Shown one piece after another: positions 7,971-61,100 of a stretch of 64,000 nt of DNA (position 1 is the stretch's first letter; the number at the start of each line of letters is the position of its first letter). The position numbers were made by a program, and so were the translations under genes. This DNA comes from Dimorphilus gyrociliatus (lineage: Eukaryota > Animalia > Annelida): positions 786,942 through 850,941 of the forward strand of contig CAJFCJ010000009.1 of assembly GCA_904063045.1 (NCBI GenBank). The letters are read 5' to 3'. Under the pieces are notes generated by a model, which worked only from the letters and a program-made list of their open reading frames with translations, did not search any database and was not told the origin of the DNA.

Positions 7971-8411
7971 CTTAACGTGTAATGTCGATCAAGAAGTATT
8001 CATTTTATGTTTTTTAGGAAATACAGTTTTAACGATTTTTTAATAGTCCAATCAAAAATATTACTTGAAAGCATATTAATCCATTATACAAATAACGAAG
8101 AAAAATCGATAATAAGAATCTGCTCAAAACTTAGTCAATTATAGGTAAAAGCTATCAAAGACGATATTTGTCATACAAGTAAATACATTAATAATATCAT
8201 TCATCTACTAATATTGAATGGAACCTTATTAGAAATGGAAAAATAGCATTAACCTATTATTCTTTTACTAGAAAATGTTCGCAGAGTGCTACCATGTGTA
8301 ATAGCGCCATCTATATTGTTACCACTCCTAGATAGATTCTGTCCTTGGGTATTGTAATTTACCAAATTATCAATTGAAAAATAGCGAAAGATCAATTTTG
8401 TTACTGAAAGT

Positions 8412-22420: not shown

Positions 22421-23551
22421 GAGAGCGATATATCTTTTTCTAATCTTATCAACTAAAAAATCAATCTTTAATTATTGCTCATAAATGATTTTTTTCTTAA
22501 TAGAATTATTTAGTTAATCCTTTTTTTTTTAAAAAAACAAAAACTAACAAAACTAGAAGAAAAATGTTAAAACAGATAATGTTATTGTCAGTTTTGAAGA
22601 CGTTCTATTTAGATTTGTTTTCCTTTTTTAGTAAAAAGTATAGTTATATAAAATTTCCTTAGTAAAGTATTTATTATATAAGACGAATATTTATACAAGT
22701 TATTAATAAATGAATTTAATAACAATTGCTTTTTATCAATAAGCTTCTATTATTCAAAATAATATCCAACAAAATAAGCTTTTTAGCTATATGAGAGATA
22801 TAGAATGCTAATCGTCAGACTTTTAATTGTTGAAAATTCTTTAATATTTCTTTGCCTATTTACCCGGTTACTGGGATATTCCTCTTAATTGATAGGTTAA
22901 GCAGTTTTTCAAATATTTTTAACGGAAGTTCTTTTATTTACGTTTGCAAAGTTTCAAGATTTTTAGTCATTTTCCAGCTAAATAGAGAATAAACAAGTAC
23001 AAAAATAGTGAAAAAATTTATTATTTAATAAATAAAGATTATTAATTTACATATTTTTTTCTTTCTATCATTTCTCTTCTATTTTTATTGAAAAGAATTT
23101 TTTATAAATGGTTGCTCTAAATAACTGAGAACATATTTTGTATTTAACGCCATCTCTTGAGTAAAATTATTACCGATACTCCCTGTGTTATATTGTTCAA
23201 CTTTACAATCCCTACTGTTGCTATGGACGCAGTTAAACATTAATTTCGTTCGCGTCTAGGAGAAGTACTCTTTCGACAGGATTTTGAAAACAAACAAAGT
23301 AGGCCAGAAGGTGATTCTAAAAAATATAATATTTTATACAATTGCTTTCTCCTATTCTCAAATTCATTTGTATATACGAAATCTTGCTAAGCGCACCTTT
23401 ATTCTATTTGTGGCATGTTATTGTACTTTTTCTCTCCGCTTAGATGATTATTGGTGATATGTTGTTATTTATTTATTAAATTTAGCTTTCAAGTATTCTG
23501 AATTTGCCGCATCTTGATTAAGATTTTATTTAAACAAACTTAAATAAAATT

Positions 23552-49908: not shown

Positions 49909-52900
49909 TTTAGTCTATTTAGAGCGACCCTTTCAGAGAAAGATATTTATACTTATATAGATAACTTTACCTTGTACTATTTAGAGTTCTTGTTCAAAGT
50001 CAGATCAAGTAATTTATATGAGCTGTTTATTATGGATTAGTTCTCTTTCCCTATAGGTAAAGGGATTTTCAGTCATTTTTCCTGGATAACCTCTTTTCCG
50101 GGGTCGATTATCGTATTTGTCTATATGCTAAATGATTAAACAATTATGTTAAGTGAAAAAACAAGAAGAGAAAGAGAGGGAAAACAGAGGGAAAACAATT
50201 AACAAACTTGTATATATTTATATAAAGAAGGGGTTATATAAATAACTTACACTATTGAATAGTTGTTTTTTTAGATATAACTTAACAGTTAGACCTTCCT
50301 CTCGACAACTGTATTCTATATTTAATATTTCCACTCCCAACAGTTCGTATTGTTAAACACAATGAACAGAATAAACCGACAAAGTTACACTTGTCTTAAG
50401 ACAATTTAAGGAAGGATTTTTTTTTTCAAGCCCCTTTCCAATCATTTATTAAACAATTGTTAAGAAGATCGTAATTATTTAAGCTACTCCGCCATTTGAA
50501 TTATATAAAGCGTTTTTCATAATCTCTTTTCAATAAGTTTTCTTTTCAAATTCAACAATTTTTGATCTCTCGCTAGTCTTTAATAAAGGAATATTAATAC
50601 TTCACAAATGAAGTATAATCGTTCTCTTAAAATTTCCTTTTCTTTATTGGATAATCAAAGATTTTGTTATTGGTTCGCATAAATGTTTAGTTGTTAGGCT
50701 TATTTAATTATGCATGATAGTAAAAGAAGTTTTACTATCCAGATTTTAATCTTATTACGTTTTTTTTAACAGGCCTTTATATTTGTTTACCTTTTTAACT
50801 GACTCAACATTTTTAAGTGAAATTTCAACTTAAACTAATCAGCCTAAATAGGAAATAAGCTTGAATAAACATACTCTTTAAATGTTAATTCATTCTATTG
50901 AATGAATTGTAATAGTAGTTGAAAAGAAGGGAAACTTTAAAATGGTTTTACTTCCTTTATTTTTAGGATGTTAAGGGCGTCGATGAACATGGTCGTACAG
51001 CTCTTCACTATTGCGCCGAATCTTCTAAAACAGATATAGCTAAACTACTGCTGGAGAAGGATGCTACGATTGCTAATTGTCGGGATAAGGATGACGGATA
51101 TACGCCTCTCCACCTGGCCGTTATATCGTCAAATATCGAGTTAATAAAATGTCTTATTTCCTATAAAGCTGACCCAAATATTCTTGATAATGAAAGTCAT
51201 AGTACTATGCACTGGGCTTCAGTTTGCGGCCAGGATGAAGTTATTACACTTTTAATGGAGGCCGGTGCCAATCCTAATTCCAAAGACGCGTTTGGTGCCA
51301 CACCCCTTCACTATGCGGCTCAATTGTGCTCTAACAAAACTGAAAATGATGATATCGAGTCTGCTAAGGGAATCCTTGAAAAATTTTTGGGATATGACTG
51401 TGAAGTGGACTCACAAGACGAAACCGGTCGTTCCGCTTTACTTTGGGCTGCCTGCGTTGGTACCCAGCACGCTTGTAAAATGCTCATCGATAAAGGAGCA
51501 AATGTCAATTTTTCCGATAATGATGGATTAAGTGCTTTACATTGTGCAGCTTCGCAGGGCTTTGAAGAAGTTATTAACTTTTTAGCTGGTTCAGCAAAAG
51601 TAGACGCCGAAGATAAAAATGGTTGTACACCCTTATATTATGCTGTCAGCCATGGGCACGTAAAGGCTACTAAGGCTCTACTAGAGGTAATTACATTATT
51701 ATTGTTATCAAATATTGAATAAATAGGATTAATTCATTTTTTTTTTGGCAGAATGGTGCTAATCCTTCACAAACTGATTTCAAAGGAAGAAGTCCAGCAC
51801 ATTGTGCAGCTTCAAAAGGTCATTTGGATTGTTTAAAAGTGTTACAAGAGTTCAAGGGAGACTTATGGTTGCCAAACAGAAAGCAAGAACGAGCCATCCA
51901 TGAGGCTTGCTTGGAAGGCCATAATGGTAAATTTCAGTGGAAATACAATATTTCTATTATTTGAACAATTCTTTTCTTTTATCTATCAATGTATTTAAAT
52001 GATTTCCCATTTTAATTTATTTTCTTTTGTATCAACCTTGAAAGGTAAAAATAACAAATTAATTACTCTTTTTAGAAATTGTCGACTATTTATTATCGGT
52101 TGCTAAAGATAAGGAGAGTGTAAATAAAGCAAATGCTGACGGCCGAACGTGCCTTCACATTGCCACATTGACAAATAACATAGATTTGTGTAAACTGTTG
52201 GTTGATAAGGACGCTGATTTGGATGTAATTTATGAGATTAAGGACAGATCGTTGAAACCATATGATATAGCCGTTTACAAGAAACATTTTAAATGTGCTG
52301 AAATTGTTAAGCCACAGATTAAAAAGGCAGATGATGACAAAAATGATGAAAACAAAGACGAGGCGGAGGAAGAAATAAAGAATGATTCTAAACCTGAAGA
52401 AATTGAAAGTAAAGCAAATGTTAGTGAAGAAACTGAGCAAATATCGGAGGATACGCCTGAAGAGAAGAAAGAAGAGTTTCAAACAGATGACAATAAAACT
52501 ATAGAACAACCCGATGAGAAACCAATAGATGAAGAGAAGACAGCTGAATCAAATCTTGAATCAACACATCCAGAGGAATCAAATGCTGAAAAGGAAAAAC
52601 TTGAAGAAAATACTACTGAATCAAATAGTGAATTAAAACAAACTAATTCTGAAGAGGCAGAAGTGAATGAGCCAAAATCAGAGAAGAAGGTCGACGATAC
52701 AAAATCCGCAGGTTCAGCCGAAGAGAAAGATACTGATATTGAAAAGGAAGAAGATAGCAAGGTTGAAGCGAAAGTATCGAATGATAGTGAAAGAGAAGCA
52801 GGAACTGCTGAAGTCACTAGGGTTGAAACAACCTCTTCGGAAGATAATAAGGTAGAATCAAAAACCTCGGAAGATAATATAGTAGCAGCAAAGACATCGG

Positions 52901-55698
52901 AAGATAACAAGGTAGAAGCAAAGACATCGGAGGATAACAAGGTAGAGGCAAAGACATCGGAAGATAACAATATAGAATCAAAGACATCGAAAGATAACAA
53001 GGTAGAAGCAAAGACATCGGAGGATAACAAGGTAGAGGCAAAGACATCGGAAGATAACAAGGTAGAAGCAAAGGCATCAGAAGATAATAATGTTGAAGCA
53101 AAAACTTCGGAAGATAACAAGGCTGAAGCAAAAACATCGAATGAAGTTAAACCTACAGAAAGTAATCAAGTCGAAACAAATAAATCAGCTAACAAAGAAG
53201 GTTCAATCAAGTCGAGTGAAATGAAGACAGAAGATCAAAGTAAAGCAAATGAGGATAAGCTATCTAGTCAAAGTGGTGAACATAAACCTGCAGAGCAGAG
53301 AAATAATCAAGCAAATTTGACTCAGGAAACTGAAAGACTTGAAACTGACAAAAAGTCAGCATCAAAAACTACTGTTGGTAACGGTGATAATAGCAAAAGC
53401 AGTAATAATCCAAAGAGAGAAACTTTTCCAATATCAGTTCCCGTTCCTATCCCTCCCGTCTCTACATATAGTGACAAAAAGCGCAGAGATACTCGAGCTC
53501 CTAGTCGAAGAGCATCATCTAGAGCTAAACCAATTGAAAAACAGAAATCTTCTGTTACTGAAAAGAAATCAAGTAGTCCTTCTAAACCTGCAGTTCAAAA
53601 ACGACCAACCGAAGCAGTTAAAAGCCCTAATAAGAACAATTCTCAATTCACAAGAGAATCTACAAAATCTAAAATACCAGCAGCTGTTGCGACAGACAAG
53701 TCACAAGATGAAAAAGTCAATTCAAGCCCCAAGCCTATGACTTCGCATTCAAGTGAAAAAACAGAGTCAAAAATACCCAATGGTCAGATTGGAACACCCA
53801 TCAAGACAATTGGAAATAAGTCAGCTCAAGAATCTGAAAACAACCAAAGTAGCCCAGAGCAAACAAATCAAAACGTGACAGAAAACATTTCACCAGCCGA
53901 GAAAGCACAGACTACTGTCAAAGAAACTAAAGTTGAAAATAAAAATGAAAAGAAAGAGGAAGTTAGTAGCGAAGCAGTAATTTCCACAACACATCTAGAA
54001 GAACAAAGTTCCCAAGTGAAGTCGCAAAATAATCAGGAAGATAATCGTCCAAATAGCGTTCAAGAGTCAAAAGCGGAAGCTGGTGTAGGCCAAAATTCAA
54101 AGTCGATTGGGGAATCAGTCGTCGTTGATAAACCCAAAGATAATAATGAAACAATCAAAAAGAAAATGCATGAATCTTCAGTATTAGAAGCAACTGCCGT
54201 GGCAGCTGCGGTTGTGAATACTTCTCTTGAAGAATCGCATGTGAGCGAAGAAAAAGAAATACCAAAAGAGGCTAGAGAAACTAAAATTGTACATAATTCA
54301 AAAGCTGAAGAAGAAAGCAATCCAAAGGAAACTAAAGAACCTGCAAATGCTAAAGAATCAATTGTTATCGACTCTAACGATAATCAAAAAACTGAACATA
54401 CGACAGAGTCCGATATTCGAGATACAGAACGTGCCAATGAGAAAAGTAACACGAAGAGAAATGATTTGAAAGAGGAGCAAGATCCTATTGTAGAAAAAAA
54501 GAAGCTCAATCGTAATAGCAATAACCCATCAGTTACTTTGGCAAATGATACAAAACGTGACGAAAAGGAGAAAAGTGACAAAAAACCGCAACACATTAAT
54601 CGGTGGGATAGAAGAGAAATCAATACAAAGGAAGAGTACAATAAGAAGGTAACTAAACCAATCAATAAAGACAACCACGACGAAAAGAGTTCTACGTTTG
54701 AATATAATAGACCTATATTAAAGAGAGAAACAACTGATTATAAGAAACAAAATACTCCAGATCGAAGAGAACTCTATAGAAATCGAACAGATTTAAAATC
54801 AAGAGAAAAACGACCGGAAACAGGAAATCCGTACGAATCTACTTTTATACCGCCGATGACCCCTTTGAGACGAGAAAAAACGCAGACGTTTTGTTCGAGA
54901 GAACCAACTATTATTGAAGATGCTTCTCAACCACCGCCTCGTTTGAATCGTGAACGGACAAACGGAAATGTATTCCATAAGAGATTACCTCTGGTCAGAA
55001 GTGACACGTCTCCCAATTCTACTAGTAGTGAGGGATCCGTTCGAAATTTTCGTTTTAGATACGTTCCTCTTCGCCCTAAGCGTTTGGAAGAATCGCCTTA
55101 TAGACAAGTGGAAAATCGACCAAAAACTGCACCTAGACCAGGAACGAGACAAGGTTCAAAAATTCATTCTAGACCCTCAACAGCTTCTTCAAATTCCCAA
55201 AAACAAAAGTCAAGAATAGGTTTAGATCGGCCTAAAGTTGTCTACAAAAGAATTGACAATCATATACAAGAAGCGGTTAGACTATTTGAGTTGAAAAAGT
55301 TGGCAACACAGGAGCTTAACCGAGCTAAGAGATTAACTGTGTACAACCAATATAGAGGAAGTATTACCAGTAAAACCATTTTGAAGACTCTCATGGAGAA
55401 TTATAATCAAAAATCGATTCCACGCTATCGTACAACACAGAGCCAGTTTAGGGATATAAGATCGTGGCAGGATCATCTAAAAGATCAATTAACACAAGTT
55501 AACCAAGATGAAAAGGCTTACGAACAAGAATTTGGGGTAATAAAATATTTTAATATTTAGTTTATTTGTTATTTCATATTCTAATATGTTAATTTGTATT
55601 ATCTAATTTAGTGGAGACTCCAGCATAGACCATATTCAACAAAATGGTTAATCTACACACCGAATCAGGGAAAGACTAAAACTGAGAGTAGTCACTAA
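49130..55698 (+). CDS. Large ankyrin-repeat protein (inversin-like N-terminus) with a >1000-aa low-complexity tail
   Basis: Exon 1 (49130-49201), a 1.8-kb intron, then about 10 ankyrin repeats (GRTALHYC, GYTPLHLA, GATPLHYA, GRSALLWA, GCTPLYYA), a 3.4-kb exon, and a last exon ending in TAA 55696-55698. Confidence 0.85.
49870..49905. repeat. (TC)n intronic microsatellite
   Basis: TC run with one interruption. Confidence 0.9.
52834..53133 (+). repeat. Coding minisatellite, 10 x 30 nt (TSEDNKVEAK)
   Basis: Unit acatcggaagataacaaggtagaagcaaag; units 3 and 8 are identical, as are units 4 and 7. Confidence 0.95.
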
Positions 55699-55723: not shown

Positions 55724-57320
55724 TTAATCCGCTTTCAAATCATTCTTAACTTCATCCGGAATCTTATTCAAGTACCAAGTGTGCTCAGACTCTAAGCACG
55801 TAGCCAGCACTCCACTGGAATTTCTTCTTGGAACGTTCACTTCATATGGAATATTGACACCTCTTATATCTGTCAACTTTCCGCCGGCCGCCTTAAGGAC
55901 AGCTTCTGGAGCTGCAGTATCCCATTTTTTACAACCTGGAGATGCAAATACATAAGCATGAGCTTTGCCTTCAATGAGCAAGAGAACTTTGTGCCCAGCG
56001 CCACCAACTTTGATAACTTCTGTTGGCTCGCAAGAATCTACGGCAGCTTTTACAGAACCACTGGAATGTGATCGAGTCGTTGTTATAATTCTACCAGTAG
56101 ATGGCGGAACGGTTGGTTGAGGTATTCCATAAGCTCCTGAATGCAATATTAATAGTATTGGAAAAATGAAAAACAATTGAATAGTAACGATGTGATTCTA
56201 TCTGTGTATATAATCATAAAAAGTTCCGTTTGCAGATGGTGCAATTTAATAAACATTCATACGATATATCATTGTCTAAACTGTCTGTTGCATATATAAT
56301 TATGCTTACCCACGCCCACAATTCCCCAGATAGTTCTTCCTAGTTCAGCGTCTGGTCCAGCTTTATAGTTAAAGTAAGGTTGATAGATTACACCACCGAC
56401 CGCTTCTCCGTTGACCGTTACTCCAATTAGTACAGTTACATGATCCAGAAGGCCTATAGATGATAGTAAATCTTTACAATTTGATAACAAAGTTTCCTTA
56501 ATCATAAAATACCTTGCGTGTACTCTGCTGTACCATCTAATGGGTCGATCCAAATAATTATCTAAACGCAACAAGGAGAAAAAAGAATATCAGCTATGTG
56601 CTCGATGAAGCACATTACGTAGCCATGGAAACGAGGCTTACTTGGTCGTCTGTCACGTTTTTTAGTTTGTCTGGTAATCGATCTGCAGTGCTTAAAACTT
56701 CTTCTGACTGAGATAGTTCTATCCAATCTTCGGGTACTTGGGAAGAATCCAGTTCCTCCTCACCAATCATGGTCACCTTGGGATAACGTTTTTTTAATGA
56801 CGCCATAATGCATCTTTGGGCAGACCTATCAGCTTCGGTTTGCAAATCATTCTTTCCCTACAGAAAAACAAAAGAGATTATTTGAAATCTATATGTCATT
56901 ATCATTAAAAGCAGTATGTGCCATAATTCCAATCTATTTAATTCAATACCTTCTCAACAATTCCTAAGTTACCCTTTTTTAGAATATCTCTAATGATATT
57001 TCCTGCTTTTTCCGATATATTAACAGAGCTAGCGATTATGTCACTTAATAAAGGCATTATTGACTATTTCACTCTCAATGTAATCCAACCAGCTGATGCA
57101 AACTTGATTGTGAACTATAGCCTGCAGAAATCACGCCATCTCTCTCAATACTCTTGCGCCATCTATTATCTTTTCTTAATAAAATTAAAATATATAAATA
57201 TATAATTACCTTATTAACAATACCCCACTTTCCTTCTTGAAACAAGTTTCTGATTATGCTACCACTTTTCTTTGCCGCTTGAACAGCTTGTGACATGATA
57301 GAGACAATTCTTCCTGACAT
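55724..57320 (-). CDS. BPNT1: 3'(2'),5'-bisphosphate nucleotidase 1
   Basis: [74 protein letters not shown]. Confidence 0.95.
56619..56632. promoter_or_regulatory. X-box GTAGCCATGGAAAC inside a 65-nt BPNT1 intron
   Basis: Exact match to the ciliary X-box consensus GTHNYY-AT-RRNAAC. Confidence 0.4.
56950..57057 (-). CDS. BPNT1: Alternative first coding exon (1b) of BPNT1
   Basis: 108 nt encoding [36 protein letters not shown], ending in a phase-0 AAG|GTATTG donor; paralogous to exon 1a (57210-57320). Confidence 0.8.
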
Positions 57321-58164
57321 TTTTTATGATTAAAATGATTTGCCTACGAAAATTGATATTACTTCAAGACCAATGAGAATGACCGTAACAAGCGTCTATT
57401 TGATTCTAAATTATTATAGAATTTAAAATAATTATAAGTTTGGGTGTTCGGCAATTTGTTCTATTTATAGATGTCGCTACTGTCTTCCGGCCCCGCGGTC
57501 TCAGCGACGCCGATCTTGGATATGAGATTTTCAGTAAGTTTTTCATAAAGTATTGAAAATTATATTACAGATATACGTTAACGATTAATACAACAAAAAA
57601 TGATTAACAGTAATCCATACTTTTCTTCATTTTAATTCCGATTCATATGTGACAGTTAAATTATCTAAATTTTCGCTCGATTCTTTTATTTCATACATGT
57701 ACTCTTTGTTTTGAACCTCAGAACTCTCCTTCTCTTTTTGTTTTCACCGATCTCACTATTAAAGTAGAAAAGAAAAGCCAAAATAATAATATAGTGATTA
57801 TTAGAGCTTTAAGAATTTACATTAATAGATATAATCGCATTTGGCTATTAGGTAAAAACTAATATTAATATTATTCCAGATTTCAGGCTTAAACAGAGAA
57901 ATTAAGCATTTATGATAATAAAAGTATCATATTTAAAGCAGTTTGTTTTAAATTTTTAATAACGATATAAAAGTTAGCGCTGATTAAATCTAACCAAAAT
58001 ATTAATTACGTATATAAATGTTTTATATAATTTTCGACAAGTGTTTTTATTGTGAAATCTTTTCTAGATCGATTCTTGGGGCATAGAATTTTTATTATTA
58101 TGTTAACTTATAGTAAAAATATTTATATTTTCTTGTGATAAAATAATTAATTTGCAGCTTTAAA

Positions 58165-61100
58165 ATGGATCATAACCAACCGATTGATTCGGAAAAATCT
58201 TCCGCTTCACCCGAAACGACAGCAGATGCTCAAGAAATTTCTGCGAAGAAAGCAAAATTGTCGTTAGAAGACATTTGTTCATACTCTGAAGAAGTTGGGG
58301 AAGTCGTTTCCAAGATATCTGAAGAAACTATTGTTACAGAAGTGAAAGCATGCTTAGAAGAATGTGTTATAAAATGTATCTCGGAAGAAGAAAGTAAATC
58401 CTTGATTGAGTCGCAACTGGAACCGTCTGAAGAGTCTGAGGATAATATTAAAGAGCAGACTGTCGATGACAATGACAGTAATTCTAATAATGATGTTATT
58501 GAGCCAGACTCCAAAGAGACACTGTCAGAAGCAGATGATAAAGAAAATACGATCCTCGAAGGATTGAAAGCTAAAGCTGACGAACAAAGTTCGGATGAAT
58601 CCAGCTCTAAAAATGATGACGATCAGCATTCGAACGAATCTAGTGCGGTTGAAGACGATCAAAAGTTAAACACACAAAACCTGAAAGTTACAAATGTTGA
58701 GGACGACAGCAACTCAAATGAGGAAGTAACTCTTGTGGATGATAAAATCTTTAGCAAAGACACTATTATGAACGAAGAATGCAATTCAAGCGAACCTTCT
58801 CCCTTGAAAGATGATCAGAATTCGAATGAACCTAAAACTATTGATGAAGATCAAAATTCAAATGAACCTTCGCCCTCGGAGGATTCGAACGAGCCCATAA
58901 CAATGGATGAAGACCAAAATTCAAATGAACCAGTTCTGATGGAAGAAGATCAGAATTCAAACGAACCTACTGCAACAGAAGAACAATCAGCTGCTGACGA
59001 TGATCAGAGTTCAGTTGAGAAGCAGACGGCAGAAGAACTAAAAGAAATAGATTCAGACACAAAGGCCTCTAAGGAAGATATTGTTGAAAGATATAAGTTA
59101 CCTTCAGTTGAATCGTCTCAAAATGCTGAGGATTCGAGAAGCAGTGATCAAAGTAAACCTGAAAGTAAAAATGGTGGAGAAAAGCCCACCAAACGATCCA
59201 GCTGTAGGACATCGTTAAGAAAGGAAATGAGTCAAATCGGACACGTCGCGTAAGATTTTAATTTTTATATTCTTTCATAAAATTTATTTGCAATAATTCT
59301 AATAAAATTTTTATTTTAGCCGCCAAATTGGCGCTCAGGAAGTTATAGAATATCAATGGCCAGCCAACTCTGAGCATCATTATTTCCTGCAAGAACAAAT
59401 TTCTGATTATCTTGAAGTAGTTTCATTCAGAAGAAGATATCCAGGTAAAATTATTTCTATCAAATATTGATTTTCCTTCTAAACGGGATTGTTTCTAACA
59501 AATAGAATTGACTCGACGGAATATAGAACCAAACGAACGAAATTATCTGCTAGATAGAGGACTTGTAAATGAAACTCAATCTGACCTAGGTATATAAGCC
59601 GATTTCATTAATAATATTTGTTGTAGCAATAGTACTAGAAAATTCTTTCATACATAGGCTTAGTTCCATTACGAAGTGAAGAGGTCATGGAACTTATGGA
59701 AAAAGACTTTCCTGAAAAATGTAAAGAAATAGCTAAAGTTCTTAGAGAGCGAGAAAGAAAAAAGATGATAGAAACCGTAAAAACTACTTATAGTACTCAG
59801 AAAACAATTGACAAACATAAACTAGAGCATTTAAGAAAAAAGGCAATTAAAGGAGCTTCTGAATTTAATTCCAATCTACGACGAGAAAGAAAAGATGAGA
59901 GAAGAGTTTATTTCGATTTACAAACAATGGTTCGTTAATTACTTTTTTTTTCTATTAATTAATGAAAATAATGACAATTCTAACTGTTTTAATTTCCTGT
60001 AGCAAGTGCATTTCCCTCAAAGAAAACTTAAATTGAAGGATCCTTCCTATAAACAGGCATATCCAGCAGCTCTTATTCCAGGACAATATACAGACTACAC
60101 TAAAAAGTATATTACTGTCTTGTATAAGTTAAAAGCATCATACTATAATTACAATGATATATCTAGATTTAACAATACTCAATTGAAATGTCTGCCTCTG
60201 AACTGTGCTCTTCGTATGCCTCCAACACCACCTCCCGAATTGGAAACTCATTTCTCTGAAGATGTAAATAGTTCTTTTATTGCATTTTAGAGGATAATAT
60301 TTTTAACTTATTGAAAAAATCTGTTTCTAGTCCGAATCAAGTAAAAGTGATGAAGAGTCTCAAAGTTCTGACATGAGTTCTGAGGACGAAAGTAATAATG
60401 AAATTGTACCAGAGGAAGTTGAAAAAGAACCGGTACAGACAACACCTGTAAATAGAGCTTCAAGGGTATTAGTTGGAGGTCGAGCAAGACGTAAGAGAAG
60501 AGGAGCATTCCTCTTCAGCATGCCGAGGAAATTGCCACCAAAGCCTGTTGGTAGACCACCAGGCCCTGGAAGAGGGCGAGGACGTGGTAGAGGAAGAAGG
60601 GTAAAACCTATTCAAATATACCTGTTTCAAAAAAAGTTCTTTTTATAATCTTAAAATAAATAATAGGGTCGACCGCCTTTGAGAAATGTTGCTAGGGAAA
60701 TACCACCTTTAAAACTAAATTTAGTAAGTTTTATATATCTCGTATTTTAAAAACCGGAATTCTCTTATAAATTCAATATTTTTGCAGAGTGCGCTTCCCA
60801 AAGAATCATCTGATAGTCCAACGCCAATAGTGAATATTCTATTTTTATCTTTTAATTTTTATATATATATATGTGTTCAATATCGCCTTAAGGCCTCAAC
60901 CGAAGAAGTTTGCGGTATTTGTCGAGGAGACGAACAAAAGAATAAGGAAGGATCACCAGAAGATCTTGTTAAATGTGGCGATTGCGGAAGAGCAGGTATT
61001 TATTAACACTTTGCTTCCAATCGATAATAACAGATGCTTAAAATTTAAAATGATCAGATTTTGAATAAGATGGCTCTGTGGCTTAGTTGGTTAAAGCGCC

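What the first reader, a model, noticed from the sequence alone, without database searches (positions are those of the whole stretch)
56857..57365. BPNT1 has two duplicated, apparently mutually exclusive first coding exons
Seen: two homologous ATG-bearing exons in tandem, 1a (57320-57210, [37 protein letters not shown]) and 1b (57057-56950, [36 protein letters not shown]). Both end at the same codon with phase-0 GT donors compatible with the exon-2 acceptor at 56857. Also seen: a GAA|GTAATA donor at 57362 upstream of 1a and a TTTCTGCAG acceptor just before 57122, which would splice out 1a and deliver 1b. Splicing 1a directly to that acceptor gives a TAA that overlaps the 1b ATG (TAATG). Known: this segment encodes the first helices of the inositol monophosphatase-like fold. 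Inference: two BPNT1 isoforms with a swapped N-terminal module, possibly differing in substrate preference, Li+ sensitivity, localisation or tissue. I do not know of this arrangement in other BPNT1 genes.
Basis: partly seen in the sequence, partly recalled or inferred. Interest (0 to 1): 0.72.

Follow-up and report, generated by a model that had tools for sequence, protein, structure and literature searches.

The report
Two alternative first exons in BPNT1
A housekeeping enzyme gene (BPNT1, which clears a by-product of sulphate metabolism) in the tiny marine worm Dimorphilus gyrociliatus has two related start exons, both kept by selection; this is a new case of a known way to make two protein versions, and nobody has tested what the second version does.

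Summary
On the minus strand, two ATG-bearing exons lie in tandem: 1a (57320-57210) and 1b (57057-56950). They are homologous to each other and to the N-terminal exon of animal BPNT1. Both end at the same codon with phase-0 GT donors. RNA contigs from two runs show 1b spliced to exon 2. Exon 1a is transcribed, and its RNA contig stops exactly at the 1a donor, but the 1a-to-exon-2 junction could not be shown.

The strongest new evidence comes from a close relative found in Logan contigs. It has both exons intact. Between the two species, 1a shows 22 synonymous and 10 non-synonymous differences, no indels and P about 1e-8 against neutrality. So 1a is a translated exon under selection.

Owenia and Helobdella have only the 1b-type exon, so the duplication is lineage-specific.

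The donor at 57362 is not used in the one RNA contig that covers it. Neither that donor nor the acceptor near 57122 is conserved, and the TAATG stop is miscounted. More likely 1b has its own promoter in the 1a-1b intron, so these are alternative first exons.

The kind is already known: tandem-duplicated N-terminal exon substitution. The scan noted similar pairs in spinster and HGSNAT in this genome. Function is untested.

The parts
57480..57513 (.). GC-rich block, identical over 34 nt in the relative. It lies where the 5' ends of the 1a transcript and of the divergent plus-strand neighbour overlap. Read as the shared upstream promoter / 5'UTR region.
   Evidence: Alignment A1. RNA contig ends at 57506 (minus-strand gene) and 57494 (plus-strand gene).
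57321..57506 (-). 5'UTR of the 1a transcript. It is unspliced and has no ATG upstream of the 1a start.
   Evidence: X4 contig 8 lies unbroken on 57209-57506. No ATG in 57321-57520.
57210..57320 (-). Exon 1a coding part: 37 codons, the divergent copy of the BPNT1 N-terminal exon, with a phase-0 donor.
   Evidence: Intact in the relative, with 22 synonymous and 10 non-synonymous differences and codon-position differences of 9/1/22. The RNA contig ends at 57209, one shared G past the exon end.
57124..57209 (-). Upstream part of the 1a-1b intron, with no RNA coverage. It holds two conserved AGATGGCG motifs (57134-57141 and 57157-57164). Read as the internal promoter of 1b.
   Evidence: Zero depth in X4. 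Motifs conserved in the relative. Motif found 5 times in the window against 0.46 expected. CTCF-type motifs lie close to TSSs in this species (PMC7854359). That the motif resembles the CTCF core is my own recollection.
57058..57123 (-). 5'UTR of the 1b transcript. The likely TSS is near 57123 (C at 57124, A at 57123).
   Evidence: 5' ends of RNA contigs at 57123 (X4) and 57093 (X1), with no joint coming in from upstream. 71-76% identity to the relative, higher than the 49-61% of other flanks (5'UTR of 1a, upstream 1a-1b intron, 1b-exon 2 intron).
56950..57057 (-). Exon 1b coding part: 36 codons, the canonical BPNT1 N-terminal exon, with a phase-0 donor.
   Evidence: 57-63% identical to the single N-terminal exon of Owenia and Helobdella. 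Joint 56949/56856 seen in X1 and X4.
56642..56857 (-). Exon 2, shared (72 codons, phase 0 at both ends). It carries the DLQTEADR and IGEE motifs.
   Evidence: Pfam Inositol_P match.
56513..56561 (-). Exon 3, with the WIDPLDGT metal-binding motif.
   Evidence: Joints in X1, X3 and X4. Sequence.
56310..56453 (-). Exon 4.
   Evidence: Joints. Sequence.
55724..56136 (-). Exon 5 with the stop codon (55726-55724). It carries the KKWDT motif.
   Evidence: Joint in X4. Pfam Inositol_P E 2e-15. 64-66% identity to the best BPNT1-family hits, one of them named BPNT1 (amphipod Hirondellea).

Best explanation
The single BPNT1 gene of this compact annelid genome carries a tandem duplicate of its first coding exon. 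The genome is Dimorphilus gyrociliatus according to an earlier scan note, and its size and intron lengths fit that.

The downstream copy, 1b, is the canonical one. It has its own promoter inside the 1a-1b intron, with a TSS near 57123 just downstream of two conserved CTCF-like AGATGGCG motifs. It gives the isoform seen in all three RNA sources that cover it.

The upstream copy, 1a, diverged fast after the duplication. It is now held by purifying selection. It is transcribed from the upstream promoter region shared head-to-head with the neighbouring gene, and its ATG is the first in that transcript. Its donor is most likely spliced over 1b to exon 2 through a 352-nt intron.

This would give a second enzyme of 310 residues that differs only in the N-terminal 36-37 residues. 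From general knowledge of the fold, I take these to form the first helix and the strand leading into the DLQTEADR helix.

Shown:
- The homology of the two exons.
- The 1b-to-exon-2 splice.
- Transcription of 1a.
- Selection on 1a.
- That the duplication is lineage-specific.

Inferred:
- The 1a-to-exon-2 splice.
- The internal promoter.
- Any functional difference between the two isoforms.

RNA:
- The 1b-to-exon-2 joint is present in X1 and X4, and all other introns are confirmed.
- The X4 contig on 57209-57506 ends exactly at the 1a donor.
- There is no coverage of 57124-57208, so 1a-bearing RNA is spliced at that donor.
- The 1a ATG is the first ATG of that RNA.

Comparison with the relative (L007-L011, five runs, identical sequence):
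- Both exons are intact, with the same lengths and donors.
- 1a has pN 0.115 against pS 0.92, with a binomial P of 1.5e-8.
- None of 20000 neutral simulations with the same number of changes kept the frame and as much identity.
- Codon-position differences in 1a are 9/1/22.
- There are no indels in 1a, while the flanking non-coding DNA is 49-61% identical with indels.
- The relative's 1a also scores 43 bits on the family HMM.

Age of the exon boundary and of the duplication:
- The phase-0 boundary after GIVEK is ancient.
- Owenia and Helobdella have a single such exon.

Internal promoter:
- Contig 5' ends lie at 57123 and 57093, with no incoming joint.
- The conserved motif pair is shown.
- The species' promoters use pyrimidine-purine starts and TSS-proximal CTCF motifs (PMC7854359).
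- That paper also excludes trans-splicing.
Against: No read or contig shows the 1a-to-exon-2 junction.
- The only read-laying run gave assembled contigs, not raw reads.
- The protein word search with the 1a ORF was blank.
- Two metagenome scans were blank.

The 1a contig stops at the donor instead of running into exon 2. This suggests that the assembly graph branches there, so there may be more than one fate.

The 1b contig starts exactly 2 nt upstream of a decent acceptor (TTTCTGCAG|G). Those 2 nt (AG) are also the last 2 nt of 1a. So some 1a-to-57121 splicing, which would be unproductive, cannot be excluded.

Exon 1a was seen in only one of four runs. Depth figures are one value per contig and cannot rank the isoforms.
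Confidence: 0.75

Rival explanations
1. Exon 1a is a regulatory upstream exon. Transcripts from the upstream promoter splice 1a to the acceptor at 57121, so the 1a ORF ends early (TGA 14 nt into 1b). The RNA is then decayed or translated poorly. In this reading only the 1b protein is ever made.
For: The X4 1b contig begins at 57123, exactly the AG of TTTCTGCAG|G, and those 2 nt equal the last 2 nt of 1a. The 1a contig ends at the donor as if the graph branched there. That junction gives a premature stop.
Against: The acceptor is absent in the relative (TGGTATGG|G), yet 1a is conserved there at the protein level. A mere uORF would not keep the BPNT1 N-terminal pattern (36-43 bits), nor the donor at the homologous codon and phase. 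No joint from 57210 to 57121 was listed.
Confidence: 0.1
2. Exon 1a encodes a free-standing small protein, either the unspliced 81-codon ORF or a short spliced product, that has nothing to do with the BPNT1 enzyme.
For: The 1a ORF is open, starts at the first ATG and is under selection.
Against: The read-through tails differ completely between the two species (81 against 59 codons, unrelated sequence). RNA does not cover the intron. Conservation ends exactly at the donor. The peptide matches the BPNT1 N-terminal profile, which only makes sense when it is packed on the enzyme core.
Confidence: 0.05
3. Exon 1a is a decaying relic of an exon duplication, or an assembly or haplotype artefact.
For: It is the more divergent copy, with 29% mean identity to other animals' exons against 44% for 1b. 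It was seen in only one RNA source.
Against: The frame, ATG and donor are intact in two species whose synonymous sites are saturated. There is a strong excess of synonymous change. It is transcribed and spliced. The copies are only about 35-39% identical in protein and both are present in independent assemblies of a second species, so this is not a haplotype duplicate.
Confidence: 0.03

Closest known systems
Tandem duplicated exon substitution events, N-terminal class (Martinez-Gomez, Tress and co-workers; 40 of 236 human events swap N-terminal regions, PMC9741552; tropomyosin is the classic N-terminal case)
   Same: Two adjacent homologous exons of equal length and phase. One or the other starts the protein, and the rest of the protein is identical. 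Both copies are conserved under purifying selection, and most changes are conservative.
   Different: It occurs in BPNT1, where I found no report of it. It is young and lineage-specific, being absent in Owenia and Helobdella, whereas most human events are ancient. The swapped region is a buried structural helix of a globular enzyme rather than a signal peptide, transmembrane helix or disordered tail. Use of the second exon in mature mRNA is not yet shown.
Classical mutually exclusive cassette exons (for example Dscam, or the C. elegans ME clusters, PMC4165533)
   Same: Homologous tandem exons of which a transcript should carry only one.
   Different: Here there is no common upstream exon and no conserved acceptor in front of 1b. 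The choice is therefore most likely made by promoter use, not by competing RNA structures or splice-site incompatibility.
Canonical animal BPNT1 (3'(2'),5'-bisphosphate nucleotidase 1; Pfam Inositol_P)
   Same: Exons 1b to 5 give a 309-codon reading frame with the family motifs. The frame is 64-66% identical in exon 5 to the best BPNT1-family hits, one of them named BPNT1 (amphipod Hirondellea). The intron after GIVEK is shared with other annelids.
   Different: There is an extra, divergent first coding exon 1a with its own 5'UTR.
Duplicated first exons of spinster and duplicated catalytic exon of HGSNAT in the same genome (earlier scan notes s1-081066 and s1-080243)
   Same: Tandem exon duplicates give alternative protein modules in the same compact genome.
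   Different: These are other genes and other protein parts. I did not re-test those notes.

Membership tests
BPNT1 / Inositol_P (PF00459) phosphatase | Pfam Inositol_P domain above the gathering score | tested here: met
   Exon 2 scores 30.9 bits and exon 5 scores 57.3 bits against a cut-off of 27. The exons were scanned one at a time.
BPNT1 / Inositol_P (PF00459) phosphatase | Metal-binding and catalytic motifs of the family (GEE, DPxDGT, WDxxA) | tested here: met
   IGEEE in exon 2, WIDPLDGT in exon 3 and [10 protein letters not shown] in exon 5, read directly. That these motifs define the family is from my own knowledge.
BPNT1 / Inositol_P (PF00459) phosphatase | Closest relatives are BPNT1 orthologues rather than IMPA, INPP1 or BPNT2 | tested here: met
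   The best representative hits are 64-66% identical over exon 5. Their kin are named 3'(2'),5'-bisphosphate nucleotidase 1 by NCBI and UniRef. The other PF00459 loci of this genome lie on other contigs.
BPNT1 / Inositol_P (PF00459) phosphatase | PAP / PAPS 3'-phosphatase activity, inhibited by Li+ | not testable with these tools
   This needs an enzyme assay of both recombinant isoforms.
Tandem duplicated exon substitution (N-terminal type) | The two exons are homologous, adjacent, and of the same length and phase | tested here: met
   The exons have 37 and 36 codons, and both donors are phase 0 at the aligned Lys codon.
Tandem duplicated exon substitution (N-terminal type) | Both exons are conserved as coding sequence in another species | tested here: met
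   Relative L007: 1a is 29/37 and 1b is 30/36 residues identical, with a synonymous excess (P 1.5e-8 and 2.6e-5).
Tandem duplicated exon substitution (N-terminal type) | Each exon is joined to the common next exon, and never both in one mRNA | tested here: inconclusive
   The 1b-to-exon-2 joint is seen in two runs. 1a RNA ends at its donor, but no 1a-to-exon-2 joint was obtained. No contig carries both exons.
Mutually exclusive cassette splicing in the strict sense | A shared upstream exon that can splice to either alternative exon | tested here: not met
   The RNA over 1a is unspliced across the proposed donor at 57362, and no joint enters 57121. Neither site is conserved in the relative.

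The most novel reading that the evidence does not exclude
The two first exons give two BPNT1 isozymes driven by separate promoters. These would be deployed in different stages, tissues or sexes (this worm has dwarf males), and the swapped first helix would change stability, regulation or lithium sensitivity. More broadly, tandem exon duplication would be a recurrent way for this gene-poor, compact genome to regain isoform diversity, since the scan also noted spinster and HGSNAT.
Probability: 0.2. Interest if true: 0.55.

Novelty: new member of a known kind. Interest (0 to 1): 0.35.

Why it matters
BPNT1 removes PAP, the toxic by-product of every sulphotransferase reaction, and it is a known target of lithium. 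A natural pair of enzymes that differ only in the first helix would be a clean system for asking what that helix contributes.

The case also shows that a recently duplicated exon in a very compact genome can be retained under selection. It suggests that public gene models for this species may be missing such alternative first exons.

It is not a new mechanism.

Tried and rejected
Direct proof of the 1a-to-exon-2 junction:
- A word search with the contiguous 81-codon 1a ORF found nothing.
- Exact scans of JGI metagenome contigs with the 3' ends of 1a from both species found nothing.
- The word search with exon 2 returned no D. gyrociliatus transcripts, only the relative's genomic ORFs.

Own annotated protein: a full-length word search seeded with an amphipod BPNT1 (P0001) did not list the worm's own annotated protein among its best 120 hits.

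Trans-splicing as the reason the 1b contig starts at an AG: rejected, because the genome paper finds no spliced leader.

Special targeting of the 1a form: 1a has net charge +4 and no acidic residue in its first 27 aligned positions. Several of 26 ordinary BPNT1 N-termini show the same, so there is no case for targeting.

Precedent in other animals: the crustacean isoforms X1 and X2 differ internally, not at the N-terminus. A literature search on BPNT1 isoforms gave nothing relevant.

Known RNA families: Rfam over 56800-58300 gave only a sub-threshold snoRNA-like hit (24 bits against a cut-off of 39), which I take as chance.

Species of the relative: a paper search on the run accessions returned nothing.

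All searches were done exon by exon and by reference, so there was no structure prediction of either isoform and no exact-sequence look-up of a full-length product.

Full report
**What is there.** On the minus strand, a compact five-exon gene ends at 55724. Its common exons are:
- Exon 2: 56857-56642.
- Exon 3: 56561-56513.
- Exon 4: 56453-56310.
- Exon 5: 56136-55727, followed by a stop codon.

Exons 2 and 5 match Pfam Inositol_P. Exon 5 is 64-66% identical to the best BPNT1-family representative hits. Close kin of the top hit are named 3'(2'),5'-bisphosphate nucleotidase 1 by their sources.

- Exon 1a: 57320-57210, 37 codons.
- Exon 1b: 57057-56950, 36 codons.

Both end with a Lys codon followed by GT, in phase 0, so both fit the exon-2 acceptor at 56857.

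**Is the resemblance real?** Yes.
- The two peptides score 60 in a global BLOSUM62 alignment. Shuffles give a mean of -1 and a maximum of 35 in 5000 trials.
- In a six-frame search of the whole 77.9-Mb assembly, each exon finds only itself and the other exon.
- I built a profile from the N-terminal 36 residues of 26 other animals' BPNT1. Exon 1b scores 61 bits and 1a scores 36 bits. Of 5000 shuffles of 1a, none exceeds 12 bits.
- Exon 1b is the canonical copy, with a mean of 15.7 of 36 residues identical to other animals. Exon 1a is the divergent one, with a mean of 10.6.

**Organism.** An earlier scan note names the genome as Dimorphilus gyrociliatus. The assembly size, the AT-richness and the 59-173-nt introns fit the published description (PMC7854359). 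That paper also reports:
- No trans-splicing.
- Narrow promoters with pyrimidine-purine start sites.
- CTCF-type motifs close to transcription start sites.
- CAGE data and stage-specific RNA-seq.

**RNA evidence.** The tool allowed one call, and all four runs were served as Logan contigs.
- Run X4 comes from the organism itself and its contigs are spliced, so it is RNA. One X4 contig starts at 57123 and runs through 1b. It is spliced from 56950 to 56857 and then across every other predicted intron.
- A coral metatranscriptome (X1) shows the same 1b-to-exon-2 joint, and its contig starts at 57093.
- A second X4 contig of 298 nt lies unbroken on 57506-57209. It covers the 5'UTR and all of 1a, and it stops one base past the exon. 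That base is a G, which is shared by the intron, by exon 2 and by position 57121.
- Nothing covers 57124-57208.

So 1a is transcribed, and its RNA is cut at the 1a donor. What it is joined to is not shown. Contig depths (98.6 for the 1a contig and 499 for the 1b contig) are single figures per contig. The 1b contig also runs into the convergent neighbouring gene, so the depths cannot rank the isoforms.

The 1a ATG is the first ATG in the region 57321-57520.

- The proposed donor at 57362 lies inside the unbroken 1a contig, so it is not used in that RNA.
- No joint enters the TTTCTGCAG acceptor.
- By my count that acceptor's AG is at 57123-57122, so the exon would start at 57121.
- Joined there, the 1a frame does not end at the TAATG. 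It ends at a TGA 14 nt inside 1b.
- In the frame that does contain the TAA, an earlier TGA comes first.

**A second species.** A word search with exon 2 alone found two ORFs that are 84% identical. They lie on Logan genomic contigs from five runs, and all five carry identical sequence. Gene order on both sides matches the window, so this is the orthologous locus of a close, unnamed relative.

Both first exons are intact in the relative. They have the same lengths, ATGs and GTAA donors: 1a at L007:1700-1810 and 1b at L007:1963-2070.

All exons align without gaps. The flanking non-coding DNA is only 49-61% identical and contains indels.

| Exon | Nucleotide differences | Synonymous / non-synonymous | By codon position | Rates | Test against neutrality |
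|---|---|---|---|---|---|
| 1a | 32 | 22 / 10 | 9 / 1 / 22 | pS 0.92, pN 0.115 | binomial P 1.5e-8 |
| 1b | 22 | 14.5 / 7.5 | 6 / 1 / 15 | dN/dS about 0.07 | binomial P 2.6e-5 |

- In 20000 simulations of 32 random changes to 1a, 94% destroyed the frame or the ATG. None kept 29 of 37 residues.
- The dN of 1a (0.125) is somewhat higher than that of 1b (0.094) or of exons 2 to 5 (0.00-0.064).
- The relative's 1a also fits the family profile, at 43 bits.

Exon 1a is therefore a translated exon under purifying selection. What selection preserves is the BPNT1 N-terminal pattern, up to the donor and no further. The read-through tails in the two species are unrelated. The simplest product consistent with this is 1a joined to exon 2.

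**What is and is not conserved around the exons.**
- The donor at 57362 is absent in the relative.
- The TTTCTGCAG acceptor is absent in the relative.
- A 34-nt GC-rich block at 57480-57513 is conserved. The 5' ends of the 1a RNA and of the divergent plus-strand neighbour overlap there.
- Two AGATGGCG motifs at 57157-57164 and 57134-57141 are conserved, just upstream of the 1b contig's 5' end.
- The 1b 5'UTR is also conserved.
- The AGATGGCG motif occurs 5 times in the window against 0.46 expected. From memory, it resembles the CTCF core.

The 1b contig begins at an A preceded by a C. Together with the published promoter features, this points to a separate promoter for 1b inside the 1a-1b intron.

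There is one caveat. The first two bases of the 1b contig (AG) are also the last two bases of 1a. In addition, the 1a contig stops as if the assembly graph branched at that point. So a minor, unproductive 1a-to-57121 splice in D. gyrociliatus cannot be excluded.

**Age of the duplication.** I fetched the BPNT1 loci of Owenia fusiformis and Helobdella robusta and searched them with all four exon peptides.
- Each species has one N-terminal exon that ends after GIVEK, with exon 2 beginning G-K/L-N-D.
- Each therefore shares the same phase-0 intron.
- Neither has a second copy in the 10 kb upstream or in intron 1.

The intron is old, and the duplication is specific to the dinophilid lineage or a part of it. 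Exon 1b is 57-63% identical to those exons, and 1a is 36-42% identical.

**Comparison with what is known.** Homologous tandem exons that substitute for one another are a recognised class. In the human set, 40 of 236 such events swap N-terminal regions (PMC9741552).

I found no report of this arrangement for BPNT1. The crustacean BPNT1 isoforms that turned up differ internally, not at the N-terminus.

The same scan has noted duplicated first exons in spinster and a duplicated catalytic exon in HGSNAT of this genome. I did not re-test those notes.

**Function.** Nothing here tests function. The charge pattern of 1a (+4, no acidic residue in the first 27 aligned positions) falls within the spread of ordinary BPNT1 N-termini, so there is no sequence case for different targeting. 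Separate promoters make differential expression the most economical reason for keeping both exons. A change in enzyme properties through the first helix is possible but unsupported.

**Limits.** Every search used single exons by reference. The decisive junction count needs raw reads, which were not available for these runs.

**Verdict.**
- It is a new member of a known kind.
- Interest is moderate to low.

Noticed in passing
window 57494-57533 and 58158 onward (+ strand): The divergent plus-strand neighbour (ATG at 58165, acidic low-complexity protein) has a 5'UTR exon at about 57494-57533, spliced over 624 nt to 58158. Its 5' end overlaps the 5' end of the 1a RNA (57506) by about 13 nt, at the conserved GC-rich block. 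A TATA-like CTATAAATAG lies at about 57461-57470.
   Followed up: partly
window 55536-55610 (+ strand): A 75-nt GT..AG intron on the plus strand was seen in X3 and X4. It lies near the end of the 1130-codon plus-strand ORF (52168-55560). The X4 contig runs from that gene straight into the BPNT1 3'UTR, so the two convergent genes overlap at their 3' ends and the true C-terminus of the neighbour differs from the unspliced ORF.
   Followed up: no
L012 17022-18494 and 22136-23212 (Owenia fusiformis): The Owenia BPNT1 gene spans 29.5 kb and has sulfotransferase genes nested on the opposite strand inside it. These are PAP-producing enzymes sitting inside the gene of the PAP-degrading enzyme.
   Followed up: no
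window 8305-8312, 23148-23155, 56099-56106, 57134-57141, 57157-57164: AGATGGCG occurs 5 times against 0.46 expected by shuffling. Two copies form the conserved pair upstream of 1b. I did not check whether the copies at 8305 and 23148 also sit near gene starts.
   Followed up: partly
P0002 and P0003 (representative proteins, species unknown): Two BPNT1 proteins share the same core and a 1b-like helix but have different, long N-terminal extensions. One starts with a basic, presequence-like stretch. This may be alternative 5' ends in another animal.
   Followed up: no
window 56823-56897 (- strand): A sub-threshold Rfam hit to the C/D-box snoRNA family snoZ159 (24 bits against a cut-off of 39, E 0.12) straddles the exon-2 acceptor. 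I take it as chance.
   Followed up: no
G000 C1:840622-842054, C2:407502-408011, C7:3497341-3497562: These are the other Inositol_P family loci of the genome. The C1 locus shows three separate hits and may hold two tandem genes.
   Followed up: no
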